Part shown: positions 58,791-63,842 of the stretch, in pieces
Layout: the number at the start of each line of letters is the position of its first letter
Numbering within the stretch: the first letter of the stretch is position 1
From: Guillardia theta CCMP2712
Lineage: Eukaryota; Protista; Cryptophyta
Direction of reading: 5' to 3'
Assembly: GCF_000315625.1 (NCBI RefSeq)
Contig: NW_005434662.1
Coordinates: forward strand, 87,132 to 151,131
DNA length: 64,000 nt
Notes under the pieces: model-generated
The model's input: the letters and a program-made list of their open reading frames with translations, nothing else
The model's database searches: none
What the model was told of the DNA's origin: nothing
Translations under genes and position numbers: made by a program

Positions 58791-58796
58791 GTGACT

Positions 58797-59180
58797 GAGG
58801 GCCGTTTCCCGCCGGCTCCCAGATTCCAGATTTTTGACTTTATTCAAAATGATTTGAAATTTACCCCGAAATATTCACCGGTGCTTTCAATACATACTGA
58901 CAGGGGGTGGGTCCACTGCCTGTTCATATTTCATGCTCCCAGCGTACCCTGCCTACCTTCTAACAATTTTTCTCGATTGAGCTAATAGTATATTTCCATA
59001 TAGTGCCTGCCCATTCGAAAAGCAAAATCTGGGAAAGTCAACCGCATCGTTTCATTCTCAAATTAAAATGACTTATAGTTGAGTTCTCCAAAACATTTGG
59101 AGGAAAAAAAAGAAATTGACTTATATTTGTATGAAAAAATCTGGAATCTGGAATCTGGGAGCCGGCGGGAAACGGGCCTG
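58797..59180. mobile_element. MITE-like non-autonomous DNA transposon (~384 bp)
   Basis: Left end gagggccgtttcccgccggctcccagattccagattttt; right end is the near reverse complement aaaaaatctggaatctggaatctgggagccggcgggaaacgggcctg. AT-rich non-coding interior; flanked by act...act (candidate TSD). Confidence 0.8.
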
Positions 59181-59374
59181 ACTCTTGACGGTTGCCGCAG
59201 TTCTGACTCCTTGTTTTAAAGACATCGTGTTTTAAAATAGGTACGGAGGCTGACTTACAAAGTTTTAGAAATGCATATTCGGGACAAAGTTCAGTTTAAA
59301 AACAAATTTTGTTAGTGATCTGTACGGGACTAACTTTCTGCTATAAATTGTTGTATCTCAACTTTTAGTTGACA

Positions 59375-60170
59375 GACCAGGGGTATATGGCCTCCGTGAT
59401 CAGCTCACAGGGGATCGGAGAACGAGGAGGGACGGGTGGTTGATAGTCTTGATGAAATTGAAAGGGTGGGGTGGGTCCGGGACTTGAAGGGATGTGAGTT
59501 TGATGCTGCCTCAAATCGCTGACGCAAGGGTGGGTAAAGGATACAGTGCTGATTGACGGAATGGAGGCCATATTCAAATATCAATATTTGAAATTTTAAA
59601 GTTTAGAAGAAAAAGTATGTGGAGCCTCAAATTCTAATTCTGAGAGCCTCATATTGAAGAAGGCAGTGGAAGTTTTTTGGTTACATATCCTAAGGGTGGT
59701 GGGGGGAGCCACGGGTCCTTCTGTGTTTTTCAGGGGGTACTGAGTCATATTCAACACTGATTCTGTCCCAAGGGGTGGTCATTTGCGGTAGTATCATTTG
59801 CTGTTGACGTGGGTAGGGTGTTGCTGTGGTAGGGTAGTAATTTGGTCATCAGGCGATGGAGGGGTGTTTAGATAAGAAATTTAGCTCAAAGTAGAACCGG
59901 TACCATCATTTTGTGGGGGTAGGGGTGAAATTACTGAAGGAAGGGCTGAATTATGGAGGGGAGGTGGGAGGGTGGGTGGGTAAAACGTACTGCTATGCAG
60001 CGTTGATAGAACACATTTGTATCGAGAGGTGGAGAATGTGAGAGTGAAGAGGAGGAGCGGAGAGAAGAGGAATGTAAAGAAGAGAAGAAAAGATGTGTAC
60101 ACGACAAGACGAGCAGATTACGAGGGGAAGAGGATTAAAAGGGAAGGGAAGGGAAGAGGAAAAGGAAGGG
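59375..60170 (+). repeat. GGGT-rich tract (59375-59985) followed by a GA-rich tract (60020-60170)
   Basis: Same pattern as the other intergenic tracts; upstream of the kinase-ART gene. Confidence 0.6.
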
Positions 60171-60534
60171 ATATTATGCATGCCAAGTTTTGGTGTTTTG
60201 AGGTGAACCCATGTGAATCTTTTTCCCGATTCATTTGTTGATCAGCCAATATACAAACTTCTACACATATGAACTGCAAAAATCTTGATGAGAGAGGTGG
60301 CTCTGTGGAGAAAGCGCTTGCTAAGCGCGAGTGTATCCAATGGTGACCCCTGCTTGCGTTCGGAGGTTACCAAGGGAACGGTGGAGATGTAGGCTAAGAT
60401 GTGACCGAATCAAATCACTAGATGCATTAGAAAGTCTTTATTGAAATTTTGAGGAGGGATAGCTGAGTGTTTCTTGTGGTCTTTGATATCTGCCTGAATG
60501 TTTTCTTCAGGTGATTTAAAATGAGATTTGACTG

Positions 60535-62136
60535 ATGGAGGACATACCAAAAGAGGTAGGCTATACTTGGGCGCCCTTTACCATCAAGGATTGGGTAGAG
60601 AAGTATGGAGGATATGATGACGACGACGAGTGCATCAGATCCCAACTGGGCAGAGGAACATTTGCAATCACATGTCGCATGAAAAACACTGAGGGTGAGC
60701 TGGTAGCAGCCAAAATCATCAACAGGAGAGATGTGAAGAATCAGGGGATGAGCGAAGACCAGCTGGAGAGGGAAGTCCGAGTATTCAAACGTCTCTCGCA
60801 CAAGCATGTTGTAAAGTACATCGATTGTTTGAGGACCAGGAAATATTTCGTCCTCGTTATGGAGTTGGCCTCCGGTGGTTCACTGGACAACGTGGTGAAG
60901 CAGAGGCCCGTGGTGGCAGTTGATCGCGTCATCCAACTTGCGCATCAAATAGCGTCAGCTGTAGAGTACATTCACGGTGAAGGGGTTGTCCATCGCGATC
61001 TGAAGCCTAGCAACATCCTGCTAACTGACAAGGGGGTCAGCAAACTTGCAGATTTTGGCATGGCTACAATGTTGCAGTCAACTGCTGCATCAGCTCTGAT
61101 GAGTAAGGGTGGAACTCCTGCCTATCTCTCACCTGAGCGAGCCAAGGGGCAGGAGTATGGTCGTCCGGCTGACATGTGGGCGGTGGGGTGTATTTTGTTG
61201 AACTTGATTCATGGAGAGCTTAACATTGGGCCCTTGTGGGACGACAGTGAAGAAGTTGTAATCAAGAGACAGAGTTTGATCGAACAGGCTAAGGAGCGAT
61301 CCAAAGAGATTGCTGACGTTGTCCAGAAATTGTTGGTGTCGGATCCCGTGGAGCGAATGTCAGCAGTCGATGTGAAGATGGGTTTGCATTCGGTACTTCG
61401 AAGAAACAGCTCTATCATCCATTACGATTGTCCCAACATGCAGTTCTGCCGACAATTTTTAGATTCCCTGGGCCCTCCTTCAGTCAGTCCGTCATACCTG
61501 GATCCGATACATGATCGCTGTTACTGCCCCAACTGCACGCAAAAGAGCAACGTGCACGAAAACCTCAAGGTGGACGTGCAAGGAGGTCACAGGTACGAGG
61601 TACCACTGGGATGGTGCGGATTTGGCCTCAAGCTTTCTCCTCGAGCAGAAGCGCTGGGCATTTTTGGATGGCCTGTGAGCTTTCACGGATGTCCTTCCAC
61701 TGTGATCACGTCAATCTTGAATGAAGGAAGTTTGCTGATGCCGGGAGACACGCTGTTGGATGGGACCAAACTTCAGAATCGCTGCACCATGGGGGGAGAG
61801 CAACAGATTCAGCTCTACACTAGCCCATCGATTTTGTATTCAGAGCTCGACATTTACTCTTCTCCTTGTGAGTATGCAGGATCTACTGTTCGAGTCGTGC
61901 TGCAATGTAGACAACAGCCCGGATTCAGCGTAAGGGGGGAGACCATAGGATGGGAGAGGAGGTTCGGACCTGTTGCAATCTCCCCTTATTTCGAGAACGC
62001 CGAAATTGAGCGCTACACCCGGTCGAGGGCGAGCATCTTTCCTTACCGCATTCTCATCAAAGTCAACTCAGTCACTAGAGAGCACGAGGAAGAGAGGAGG
62101 AAACAGGTTCATGCGCATTTAGCGGCGTTGTTTTGA
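60535..62136 (+). CDS. Ser/Thr protein kinase fused to a NEURL4-type ADP-ribosyltransferase (PARP-like) domain, intronless
   Basis: Kinase: LGRGTFA, VAAKII, HKHVVKY, HRDLKPSNILL, DFG, GTPAYLSPE, DMWAVG. C-terminal domain: CYCPNC..RYEVPLGWCGFGL..WPVSFHG..SIL..G.L..LYTSPSILYS..VVLQCRQQPG..ISPYFENAEIERYT..PYRILIKV, colinear with the NEURL4 C-terminal ART domain. Confidence 0.88.
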   Translation: MEDIPKEVGYTWAPFTIKDWVEKYGGYDDDDECIRSQLGRGTFAITCRMKNTEGELVAAKIINRRDVKNQGMSEDQLEREVRVFKRLSHKHVVKYIDCLRTRKYFVLVMELASGGSLDNVVKQRPVVAVDRVIQLAHQIASAVEYIHGEGVVHRDLKPSNILLTDKGVSKLADFGMATMLQSTAASALMSKGGTPAYLSPERAKGQEYGRPADMWAVGCILLNLIHGELNIGPLWDDSEEVVIKRQSLIEQAKERSKEIADVVQKLLVSDPVERMSAVDVKMGLHSVLRRNSSIIHYDCPNMQFCRQFLDSLGPPSVSPSYLDPIHDRCYCPNCTQKSNVHENLKVDVQGGHRYEVPLGWCGFGLKLSPRAEALGIFGWPVSFHGCPSTVITSILNEGSLLMPGDTLLDGTKLQNRCTMGGEQQIQLYTSPSILYSELDIYSSPCEYAGSTVRVVLQCRQQPGFSVRGETIGWERRFGPVAISPYFENAEIERYTRSRASIFPYRILIKVNSVTREHEEERRKQVHAHLAALF

Positions 62137-62322
62137 ACTGATGGGAGCTTGTTCAGGGAGGAGCATCCTCTAAATCTTTTAATGCTAGTCAGGAGGATGT
62201 GAGTCGCCTCAATTCAAGTTCGCGTCAAGGTGATGATCCTTTATCGCAGCTTGGGAATGGAGATAATAACGGAGCAGTACGTTGCTGATGCCTTACGGCC
62301 GCCCGCTAATTCTTCATTGCAG

Positions 62323-63170
62323 ATGTCTGCTCCAGTTAACACAGAGTTTGAGCCTGTAAGTCCTCCCTACCTCGCCCTCTCTCCCTCTGCTCTGTCTTTC
62401 TCTGCATGCCTCCCCACTGTGTTCCTCCTTTTGTTGCTTTCCCTCGTCTTACCTCTACATTCTCAAGTCGGAAATCGCTGAATGCAAGAAGCTTCCACAA
62501 AGCGACGTGAGTCATCGATGCCCGAGAGTTGAAAGCTGTTTGACCCTTGTCTGCCAGCGCGATCACGCTCTGTACGCTGCAGCAATGGAGGGTAACGACA
62601 GGAAGGCGCGTCTGCTCATAGCGGCAAAGGCGAGCGTCCATGGCTACAAGGACGAGGTGACGTCATTCTCAGTGGTCGATTCACTTCCTCTTACCCCGTC
62701 TGCAGTACGGGGACTCGTGCCTGAGCGAAGCTGCTCGCGAGGGTCACGTGACGGTTGTGCGTGTCCTCGTTGACGGCGGAGCAGACCTGCATGCGAGGAG
62801 CTACGTGAGTGTTAGGAGTGAGGCATGCGGAGGGGAGGAGGGGCTGACATCGGCGCAGTACGGCAACACCTGTCTGATGTGGGCAGCACGCAATGGGCAC
62901 TTGAGAGTCGTTGAGTTCCTGGTGGCTGCGAAGGCGGACGTAGAAGCGAAGAATGATGTGAGTAGATTGCCTTGTTGATGATGTTTGTTGGTTGTGTGAG
63001 AAGATAGAACAAGATGCTTCTCTGCTAGCTCGTGGATTCTTCTTGTGACGTGTGAATGTCAGAACGGCAAGACAGCGCTTGCTTTCGCTATCAAAGGCAA
63101 GCACTCTAAGGTGGTCGAGTACTTGAAGGGTCAGGGAGTCAGCGAAGGATGTGCCTGCTGCATTCTATGA
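62323..63170 (+). CDS. Small ankyrin-repeat protein with C-terminal CaaX (CACCIL), 5 exons
   Basis: Exons 62323-62355, 62558-62656, 62706-62804, 62859-62957 and 63063-63170 encode ALYAAAMEGN, GDSCLSEAAREGH, GNTCLMWAARNGH and GKTALAFAIKGKH; ends GCACCIL*. Confidence 0.9.
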
Positions 63171-63259
63171 GGGGAGAAGCGACGAAGACCGAGGAGACAA
63201 GAAACAGAAATAATGATGCCGATAACGATGATGATCACGACGACACGAGCTTGAATGCG

Positions 63260-63457
63260 TTAACTGGGTTGCGACAATCTTGCCACTAATGTTCTCTCGT
63301 CGAGCGTGTTCGCAAACAAATGAAATTGATTGACTTGTGACGATATTGCCTGTCAGGTCTCCTTAATCCTCTCACCTCTTCACTCCCCTCCTCCTCTTCC
63401 TTCCTTCCCTTTTCCCCCACCCCCCCCCCCCCCCCCCCCCCCCACCCGCCGCCGCCA

Positions 63458-63516
<59 letters not shown>

Positions 63517-63842
63517 TCCTGTTTCTCTTTGGCTCCCTCCCGTCTCCCATGATCCATCGTCGCTCACCTCCAGCCGTGAAACAGCTTGTTTCTTATCCTC
63601 CTCGAAGCTCGTGTGCGTGCACTTACCTGTAGCGCCTCATAATGAAGGGAGAGGAAGGGAGGGGAGAGGAAGGGAGGGGAGAAGGAGCTACCGGTCTCAG
63701 AGAATTTCTTCATGGTGAGGATGACGTAGCCTTGCGGCGCAAGGGCGGGCAGGACTGACTCGAGCATGGCAACAGCCTGCAGCGGCGAGCAATTCATGTC
63801 GCAGACGAACAGATCGATCCGCTCGTCCTGGGCCTTGAGATC
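63260..63842 (-). CDS. RlmM/FtsJ-like RNA 2'-O-methyltransferase, 3' part (5' end beyond the window)
   Basis: IDLFVCDMNCSP..AVAML...GYVILTMK and terminal FHLFANTLDERTLVA resemble the D..VCDM, K and H....E.T motifs of RrmJ/FtsJ-fold RlmM-type MTases. Confidence 0.55.

What the first reader, a model, noticed from the sequence alone, without database searches (positions are those of the whole stretch)
60535..62136. Single-exon protein kinase fused to an apparently active NEURL4-type ADP-ribosyltransferase
Seen: an intact RD kinase (K, HRD, DFG, SPE) followed by a CYCxxC module and an ART-like domain keeping the H-Y-E positions (SFHG His ~61684, LYTSPS Tyr ~61816, EIE Glu ~62008). Established: this motif order (CYC..C, Y.LP.GWC.F.L, W..AYHG, SPS..Y, Q...PG, E.EW) is that of the NEURL4 C-terminal ART clade, which in animals sits behind Neuralized repeats rather than a kinase. 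Inference: one polypeptide may both phosphorylate and ADP-ribosylate, as a stress, immunity or conflict effector. The lack of introns in an intron-dense genome and the nearby MITE suggest recent retroposition or domain shuffling.
Basis: partly seen in the sequence, partly recalled or inferred. Interest (0 to 1): 0.85.

Follow-up and report, generated by a model that had tools for sequence, protein, structure and literature searches.

The report
Kinase–ADP-ribosyltransferase–ankyrin fusion gene, Guillardia
An expressed gene of the alga Guillardia theta joins an apparently active protein kinase to an apparently active NEURL4-family ADP-ribosyltransferase, but it is not single-exon: splicing adds ankyrin repeats and a lipid-anchor motif, giving a 722-residue protein whose combination of domains I did not find described.

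Summary
Window 60535-62136 (+) is an intact 533-aa ORF with a complete Ser/Thr kinase (Pfam Pkinase, E 9e-59). It is followed by a roughly 220-aa domain carrying CYCxxC, FHG (His384 at 61684), LYTSPSILY (Tyr428 at 61816, Tyr435) and EIE (Glu492 at 62008).

The "single-exon" reading is wrong. Transcript contigs from three studies splice a 50-nt GT..AG intron (62107-62156) that contains the ORF's stop codon. Seven further exons add a linker, four ankyrin repeats and a C-terminal CCIL CaaX box. The product is 722 aa.

A closely related environmental contig shows 45 synonymous against 7 non-synonymous codon changes, so all parts are under purifying selection.

A Telonema protein has the same domain order, but with an IRAK-like kinase and a different ART subclade. 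G. theta also carries at least nine kinase-canonical-PARP genes, which this scan had already noted on other DNA. Kinase-ART fusion is therefore recurrent and convergent.

Enzyme activities and function are inferred, not shown.

The parts
60188..60534 (+). 5' UTR (minimum extent). It includes a 4-codon uORF at 60521-60535 whose TGA overlaps the main ATG.
   Evidence: Transcript contigs X3 (from 60188) and X1 (from 60000 or earlier) run without a break into the CDS. An in-frame TGA lies at 60529-60531.
60535..62106 (+). Exon 1 coding part, aa 1-524: kinase plus ART-like domain with no intron.
   Evidence: ORF. Exon end from the splice joint 62103/62154 with cut +3.
60640..61374 (+). Ser/Thr protein kinase domain (aa 36-280), CAMK-like, with all catalytic motifs present.
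   Evidence: Pfam Pkinase E 9.1e-59. Best solved relatives are CaMKII, DAPK and Snf1, E 1e-36 to 1e-31.
61420..62079 (+). NEURL4-family ART domain (aa 296-515). It has an N-terminal Cys cluster (Cys299, 329, 331, 334), His384 (61684), Tyr428 (61816), Tyr435 (61837) and Glu492 (62008).
62107..62156 (+). Intron 1 (50 nt, GT..AG). It contains the stop codon (62134-62136) of the 533-aa ORF.
   Evidence: Spliced out in contigs of runs X1, X3 and X6, from three studies. Boundaries checked.
62157..62506 (+). Exons 2-4 (62157-62276, 62323-62355, 62468-62506): low-complexity linker, aa 525-588. There is an alternative in-frame intron at 62199-62249.
   Evidence: Joints. Exon translations match P0001. 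The 705-aa isoform P0201 lacks 17 aa.
62558..63170 (+). Exons 5-8 (62558-62656, 62706-62804, 62859-62957, 63063-63170): four ankyrin repeats. Exons 5-7 are each 99 nt, one repeat each, with phase-0 introns. The protein ends in CCIL followed by the stop.
   Evidence: Pfam Ank E 1.9e-23 on P0001:520-722. Joints. The last exon is read. CCIL is conserved in the relative contig L013.
63171..63340 (+). 3' UTR up to the poly(A) site.
   Evidence: Raw RNA reads of X21 pile up at 63025-63387, with loose A-runs behind 63340.
58795..59184 (.). MITE-like element, 1.35 kb upstream. It is not part of the gene.
   Evidence: 49-nt inverted arms, 86% complementary. At least 19 near-full copies at 91-99% identity in the genome.

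Best explanation
This is an expressed, conserved nuclear gene of Guillardia theta with 8 exons. Its main product is a 722-aa cytosolic multidomain signalling enzyme. From the N-terminus it has a catalytically competent CAMK-like Ser/Thr kinase, then a NEURL4-family (PARP-fold, H-Y-E) ADP-ribosyltransferase with a Cys-rich, probably zinc-binding elaboration. A disordered linker follows, then four ankyrin repeats and a C-terminal CCIL CaaX box.

The inferred mechanism is as follows. Geranylgeranylation, and perhaps palmitoylation of the neighbouring Cys residues, tethers the protein to the cytosolic face of a membrane. The ankyrin repeats recruit a partner or substrate. The two catalytic domains then write two marks, phosphate from ATP and ADP-ribose from NAD+, on the recruited target and/or on each other. 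Because the catalytic Glu is kept, oligo- or poly-ADP-ribosylation is possible, as reported for NEURL4. The genome encodes PARG and macrodomain proteins that could erase or read the mark.

What is shown: gene structure, expression, domain identities, fold, residue conservation and purifying selection. What is inferred: both enzyme activities, lipidation, substrate recruitment by the ankyrin repeats, and a stress- or immunity-like signalling role.
For: - ORF and motifs.
- Kinase: E 9e-59; CaMKII and DAPK are the best solved relatives.
- The order of strands and helices around His384, Tyr428/435 and Glu492 matches the PARP His, Tyr-Tyr and Glu elements.
- Family link to NEURL4: P0162 and P0170 carry Neuralized plus ARM plus this domain, are named neuralized-like protein 4 (Ptychodera flava), and hit at E 1e-23.
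- Catalytic His, Gly and Glu are invariant or nearly so in 40 diverse members.
- NEURL4's homologous HGS and ELEW motifs are required for its in-vitro activity (PMC8932523).
- Splicing and expression: three transcriptome assemblies from three studies show the same 7 GT..AG introns, and there is a poly(A) site. The exons match the 722-aa model P0001 exon by exon. MMETSP isoforms and the Hanusia phi ortholog splice intron 1 in the same way.
- Purifying selection against a 96%-identical relative: exon 1 has 25 synonymous and 5 non-synonymous changes. The ankyrin exons have 20 synonymous and 2 non-synonymous. CCIL is conserved.
- PARG, Macro and many PARP genes are present in the genome.
- Family members elsewhere are fused to ubiquitin, WWE, RBR, TIR, LRR and ZU5 domains, which is typical of signalling and conflict proteins.
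Against: - No biochemical data exist for this protein or for any member of its subclade.
- The only experimental support for activity in the family is one study of human NEURL4, which has H-L-E and not H-Y-E (PMC7955679).
- Foldseek TM-scores to PARPs are modest (0.34-0.40), and no sequence-level match to any solved structure or to Pfam PARP was found.
- Zinc binding and prenylation are motif-level inferences.
- The raw RNA reads available were 3'-biased, so isoform proportions, including any intron-1 retention, are unknown.
- The biological role is guessed from domain company alone.
Confidence: 0.7

Rival explanations
1. The ART-like domain is a pseudo-enzyme or an NAD+/ADP-ribose-sensing regulatory module, as in TASOR or PARP13. 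On this view the kinase is the only catalytic output, and the domain gates kinase activity or mediates protein interactions.
For: Several PARP-fold domains are inactive (table in PMC7955679). No activity has been measured for this subclade. The family lacks any Pfam PARP match.
Against: His384, Tyr428/435 and Glu492 are all present. His, Gly and Glu are invariant or nearly invariant across 40 diverged members, which is unusual for pseudo-enzymes. ART-part substitutions against the relative are 9 synonymous and 2 non-synonymous. Human NEURL4 is reported to be active.
Confidence: 0.15
2. The functional product is the 533-aa single-exon protein read by the first reader (kinase plus ART only), made by intron-1 retention. 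The spliced form would be minor.
For: The unspliced reading frame stays open for 9 codons into intron 1 and ends cleanly. A 533-aa gene call (P0206) exists in a public metagenome assembly.
Against: All three transcriptome contigs that cross the site splice intron 1. So do the three MMETSP isoforms, the JGI models and the Hanusia transcript. P0206 is an intron-blind call on genomic DNA. The ankyrin exons show 20 synonymous against 2 non-synonymous changes, so they are translated and constrained.
Confidence: 0.03
3. The ART domain modifies a non-protein substrate (nucleic acid ends or a small molecule), or mainly auto-modifies to build an ADP-ribose scaffold. The kinase would act on a different target, so the two activities are not functionally coupled.
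For: PARP-fold enzymes can ADP-ribosylate nucleic acids. NEURL4 activity was reported as DNA-stimulated (PMC8932523). The conserved Cys cluster could be a nucleic-acid-binding zinc knuckle.
Against: A CaaX-anchored, ankyrin-bearing architecture suggests protein targets at membranes. The family's fusion partners are mostly protein-signalling domains such as ubiquitin, WWE, RBR and PDZ.
Confidence: 0.12

Closest known systems
NEURL4 (neuralized-like protein 4) C-terminal ART domain (predicted by de Souza & Aravind 2012; activity reported by Cardamone et al. 2022, PMC8932523)
   Same: Homologous domain: E about 1e-23 to hemichordate NEURL4 proteins. It has the same CYCxxC, W..(F/Y)HG, (Y/F)xSPSxxY and E.E(W/R) motif order and a PARP-like fold. 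No Pfam model covers it.
   Different: It has no Neuralized (NHR) repeats. The N-terminal partner is a kinase and the C-terminal partner is ankyrin repeats plus a CaaX box. It lies in a separate, well-supported protist subclade. It keeps a full H-Y-E triad, whereas human NEURL4 is listed as H-L-E.
Telonema subtile protein EP00656_P001295 (P0070)
   Same: Same domain order: kinase, then NEURL4-family ART, then ankyrin repeats.
   Different: Its kinase is IRAK4/RLK-like (E 5e-43), not CAMK-like. Its ART belongs to another subclade (100/99 support). It has a long charged linker and no CaaX box. The shared architecture therefore looks convergent.
Guillardia theta kinase-PARP gene family (at least 9 intronless ORFs of about 1000-1175 aa; scan notes s1-430564 and s1-443972)
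   Same: Same genome, with the same idea of a kinase followed by an H-Y-E-type ART in one long intron-free coding stretch.
   Different: The ART there is a canonical Pfam PARP domain. The kinase is only 23% identical and carries HCD and DFD variants. There is a roughly 480-aa N-terminal region, and no ankyrin repeats or CaaX box.
Tankyrase (ankyrin repeats + SAM + PARP) and DAPK1 (CAMK-type kinase + ankyrin repeats)
   Same: In both, ankyrin repeats recruit substrates to a PARP-fold ART (tankyrase) or accompany a CAMK-like kinase (DAPK1). DAPK kinases are among the best solved matches to this kinase.
   Different: Neither combines both enzymes. The domain order differs, since tankyrase has its ankyrin repeats N-terminal. 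There is no SAM, ROC-COR or death domain here.

Membership tests
NEURL4-type ART domain family | Significant sequence similarity to the C-terminal domain of bona fide NEURL4 proteins | tested here: met
   P0162 and P0170 (Neuralized + ARM + this domain, named neuralized-like protein 4, Ptychodera flava) hit at E 1.0e-23 and 4.6e-23.
NEURL4-type ART domain family | Motif order CYCxxC ... GW ... (F/Y)HG ... (Y/F)xSPSxxY ... Q ... E.E | tested here: met
   Alignment A1 gives invariant C34, C36, C39, W84, G90, Y140, Y146 and E197, and nearly invariant H89 and T134-S135-P136, in domain numbering.
NEURL4-type ART domain family | PARP-like (H-Y-E class) ART fold | tested here: met
NEURL4 orthologue (whole protein) | N-terminal Neuralized homology repeats | tested here: not met
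   Pfam finds only kinase families in aa 1-295 and no PF07177. It is therefore not a NEURL4 orthologue and shares only the ART domain.
NEURL4 orthologue (whole protein) | Groups with animal NEURL4 ART domains in a tree | tested here: not met
   ML tree: the G. theta domain lies in clade A (100/99). The animal NEURL4-like sequences lie inside the other half of the tree, in a five-row group with amphioxus sequences (100/97).
NEURL4-type ART domain family | NAD+-dependent ADP-ribosyltransferase activity | not testable with these tools
   Only the conservation of His384, Tyr428/435 and Glu492 is available. Activity of human NEURL4 is reported in PMC8932523.
Canonical PARP family (Pfam PF00644) | Match to the PARP catalytic-domain profile | tested here: not met
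   No match for this protein. Only 1 of 40 family members matches, at E 0.17. This fits the 'PARP-like, not PARP family' view of PMC10450202.
Eukaryotic protein kinase, CAMK-like | Pkinase profile match with intact Lys (VAAK), HRD, Asn, DFG and SPE motifs | tested here: met
   Pfam E 9.1e-59. Motifs read in the translation. CaMKII, DAPK and Snf1 are the best solved relatives. A formal group assignment by kinome phylogeny was not done.
Ankyrin-repeat proteins | Tandem 33-residue Ank repeats | tested here: met
   Pfam Ank, Ank_2 and Ank_4, E about 1e-23, on P0001:520-722. Encoded by exons 5-8.
CaaX-prenylated proteins | C-terminal Cys-aliphatic-aliphatic-X, with X = Leu for geranylgeranyl transferase I | tested here: inconclusive
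   The protein ends in CCIL, and this is conserved in the relative contig. The modification itself cannot be tested here.

The most novel reading that the evidence does not exclude
Covalent coupling of a protein kinase to an H-Y-E ADP-ribosyltransferase may be a recurrent, convergently evolved design in protists. There appear to be at least three independent origins: CAMK-like kinase plus clade-A NEURL4-like ART in Guillardia and Hanusia; IRAK-like kinase plus clade-B ART in Telonema; and a multicopy kinase-canonical-PARP family in Guillardia. This would point to an obligatory functional dialogue between phosphorylation and ADP-ribosylation, for example phospho-primed ADP-ribosylation of one target or mutual auto-regulation. 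The protein here would be a membrane-anchored, ankyrin-targeted dual writer in a stress- or immunity-like pathway.
Probability: 0.3. Interest if true: 0.7.

Novelty: new variant of a known kind. Interest (0 to 1): 0.55.

Why it matters
ADP-ribosylation and phosphorylation are known to cross-talk in animals through separate enzymes. A natural single-chain kinase-ART offers a compact system for asking how the two marks are coupled.

It would also give a second, non-animal, H-Y-E-complete member of the barely studied NEURL4-type ART family for biochemistry and structure. No member of that family has a solved structure or a Pfam model.

The public record for this protein calls it only "Protein kinase domain-containing protein", so the ART domain is currently unannotated.

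That the kinase-ART design recurs with non-orthologous parts suggests selection for the combination itself.

Tried and rejected
- Sequence searches of the ART domain against PDB chains found nothing, either as a single sequence or as a 40-sequence profile.
- Pfam scans of all 40 family members gave no credible family.
- I tried to read Aravind et al. 2015 (PMC6126934), but it is not held. De Souza & Aravind 2012 is also not held. I therefore could not check whether kinase fusions of this ART clade were already listed there.
- Literature searches for kinase-ART or kinase-PARP domain fusions, and for Guillardia ADP-ribosylation, found no description.
- Citarelli et al. 2010 list Guillardia theta among organisms without PARP genes. 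That does not hold for this nuclear genome, which has about 20 PARP-profile matches.
- I considered and set aside the idea that the gene is a recent retrocopy or a horizontal transfer. Composition is ordinary. An ortholog exists in Hanusia. The nearest relatives by sequence are environmental sequences without taxon labels, and the taxon-labelled members seen are eukaryotic.
- The intron-free 5' two-thirds with an intron-rich 3' end remains unexplained.
- The raw-read RNA run (X21) is a 3'-end library. It gave no coverage over intron 1, so isoform ratios could not be measured.
- I did not build a joined CDS from the exons. The spliced product was checked exon by exon against the database protein P0001, and P0001 was used for the searches.
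- Complex prediction and a full-length fold were not run, because no binding claim is made and only pLDDT would be returned.

Full report
**Observation**

The ORF listing returns an ATG-started 533-aa ORF at 60535..62136 on the + strand. An in-frame TGA lies two codons upstream of the ATG.

Pfam places a protein kinase domain at aa 36-280 (Pkinase E 9.1e-59). Read directly from the translation, the catalytic landmarks are all present:
- a glycine loop,
- VAAK Lys60,
- HRD Asp155 with Asn160,
- DFG Asp173,
- the SPE variant of APE.

The best solved relatives are CaMKII, DAPK1-3 and Snf1/AMPK (E 1e-36 to 1e-31), so the kinase is CAMK-like.

The remaining 238 residues have no Pfam hit and no sequence match in the PDB.

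**The C-terminal domain**

An exhaustive HMMER search of 1.84 billion cluster representatives found 674 relatives at E <= 1e-3 and 53 at E <= 1e-30.

In a 40-sequence alignment across that range (A1):
- the three Cys of CYCxxC, the Trp before the His, the Gly of HG, two tyrosines (Tyr435, Tyr441) and Glu492 are invariant;
- His384, a fourth Cys (Cys299) and the T-S-P of the YTSPS motif (Thr429, Ser430, Pro431) are at least 90% conserved;
- Tyr428 is Tyr or Phe across the family.

The secondary-structure order matches the PARP His, Tyr-Tyr and Glu elements. A strand ends in His-Gly and is followed by a helix. A strand carries Tyr428, followed by a short helix carrying Tyr435. A further strand starts at Glu492. 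This correspondence is inferred from element order, because I could not inspect coordinates.

**Link to NEURL4**

Two hits (P0162 and P0170, E 1e-23) carry a Pfam Neuralized domain plus ARM repeats in front of this domain. NCBI names them neuralized-like protein 4, from Ptychodera flava.

The literature held here says:
- the NEURL4 C-terminal ART was predicted by de Souza & Aravind (2012);
- it was reported active in vitro, with activity lost on mutating its HGS and ELEW motifs (PMC8932523);
- it is regarded as "PARP-like" and not as a PARP family member (PMC10450202);
- the human protein's triad is listed as H-L-E (PMC7955679).

The Guillardia domain keeps the full H-Y-E. A maximum-likelihood tree of A1 splits at a branch with 100/99 support. 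On one side is clade A (100/99), which holds the Guillardia domain. On the other side are clade B (100/99, Telonema and Picomonas) and a less well supported group (85/64). Inside that group the animal NEURL4-like sequences sit with amphioxus sequences (100/97).

So the domain is a member of the NEURL4-type ART family, but the protein is not a NEURL4 orthologue.

**Gene structure**

The database protein P0001 (a JGI model, 722 aa) is identical to the ORF up to Gln524. It then continues into ankyrin repeats.

Transcript contigs from three runs of three studies (X1, X3, X6) were laid on window 60000-63600. All show the same seven GT..AG introns:

| Intron | Coordinates |
|---|---|
| 1 | 62107-62156 |
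| 2 | 62277-62322 |
| 3 | 62356-62467 |
| 4 | 62507-62557 |
| 5 | 62657-62705 |
| 6 | 62805-62858 |
| 7 | 62958-63062 |

The ORF's TGA at 62134-62136 lies inside intron 1. Each of exons 1-7 translates to a segment of P0001. The last exon was read from the ORF list.

Raw RNA reads from a 3'-end library mark a poly(A) site near 63340.

The public cluster holds G. theta MMETSP isoforms of 740, 705 and 616 aa. These reflect an in-frame retained intron 6, an alternative 51-nt intron, and a retained intron 3. The cluster also holds a Hanusia phi orthologue. All of them splice intron 1.

Exons 5-7 are each exactly 99 nt with phase-0 introns, one ankyrin repeat per exon. Pfam confirms the repeats (E about 1e-23). 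The protein ends in CCIL, a CaaX box of the geranylgeranyl type with further Cys residues just upstream.

**Selection**

A metagenome contig (L013, ENA ERZ930064) is 96.2% identical over 2975 nt and keeps the same exon layout.

| Region | Synonymous codon changes | Non-synonymous codon changes |
|---|---|---|
| Exon 1, kinase part | 16 | 3 |
| Exon 1, ART part | 9 | 2 |
| Four ankyrin exons | 20 | 2 |

CCIL is unchanged. All parts are therefore under purifying selection. A 1-nt length difference in exon 4 of that contig is unresolved.

**Context**

The family is highly promiscuous. Partners seen include ubiquitin, WWE, RBR/IBR, SAM-DEAD, PIF1, LRR, ZU5, PDZ, SAP, FYVE, TPR, UBA, TIR, TLD, trypsin and a "conflict" glycosyltransferase. 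Ankyrin repeats are frequent partners in clade B.

Among 197 retrieved proteins, only two carry a kinase: this protein and P0070 from Telonema subtile. P0070 has the same kinase-ART-ankyrin order. Its kinase is IRAK4-like and its ART is in clade B, so the architecture arose independently.

The G. theta genome has one further, diverged family member without the Cys motif (G000:C13). It also has PARG and macrodomain genes.

While checking canonical PARPs, I found at least nine intronless ORFs of about 950-1175 aa. The four I scanned combine a distantly related kinase with a Pfam PARP domain. The scan had already noted that family on other DNA.

**Interpretation**

The best-supported reading is a membrane-tethered, ankyrin-targeted bifunctional enzyme that can both phosphorylate and ADP-ribosylate. 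The enzymatic activities, the lipidation, zinc binding by the Cys cluster and the biological role are all inferences.

The MITE it mentioned is real: 58795-59184, with at least 19 near-full copies in the genome. It lies 1.35 kb upstream and shows no link to the gene.

**Novelty**

The domain families are all known, and the protein itself is in public databases as "Protein kinase domain-containing protein". I found no description of a kinase fused to a NEURL4-type ART. However, the two Aravind-group papers most likely to list such architectures are not held.

I class it as a new variant of a known kind, of moderate interest. The interest comes mainly from the convergent recurrence of kinase-ART fusions.

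Noticed in passing
G000:C29:209988-213324 (L009:1489-4824), and similar ORFs at C41, C234, C112, C239, C221, C195, C164, C21: A multicopy family of at least 9 intronless ORFs (about 950-1175 aa). The four I scanned have an unknown N-terminal region of about 480 aa, then a protein kinase (HCD and DFD variants), then a canonical Pfam PARP domain. The kinase is only 23% identical to the one in this finding. The scan already noted this family (s1-430564, s1-443972).
   Followed up: partly
window 58795-59184: MITE-like element of about 390 bp with 49-nt terminal inverted repeats. At least 19 near-full-length copies at 91-99% identity are scattered over the genome, so it was recently mobile.
   Followed up: yes
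window 60521-60537: A four-codon upstream ORF in the 5' UTR whose TGA stop overlaps the main ATG (TGATG). It could be a termination-reinitiation arrangement or chance.
   Followed up: no
window 62558-62957: Three consecutive exons of exactly 99 nt with phase-0 introns, each encoding one ankyrin repeat. This looks like repeat growth by exon duplication. It contrasts with the 1.57-kb intron-free exon 1.
   Followed up: partly
G000:C13:213035-213762 (- strand; L004/L005): A second, diverged NEURL4-family ART gene in G. theta, split by an intron. It lacks the CYCxxC cluster and no kinase was seen upstream. It keeps the HG, SPS..Y and E.NW motifs.
   Followed up: partly
window 63352-63570: A long CAG / poly-Gln / poly-Ala / poly-Pro simple repeat lies just past the poly(A) site. 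Transcript contigs X1 and X3 jump from 63351 to about 63570 across it. This could be a repeat-length difference, a 3'-UTR intron or an assembly artefact.
   Followed up: no
L013:2043-2080 (relative contig, ENA ERZ930064): Exon 4 is one nucleotide shorter than in the window, which would shift the frame unless the donor site moves. It may be an assembly error or a real difference.
   Followed up: no
literature: PMC2964712, Table 1: Guillardia theta is listed as having no identifiable PARP genes. The nuclear genome searched here has about 20 matches above the Pfam PARP cut-off, plus PARG and Macro genes.
   Followed up: yes
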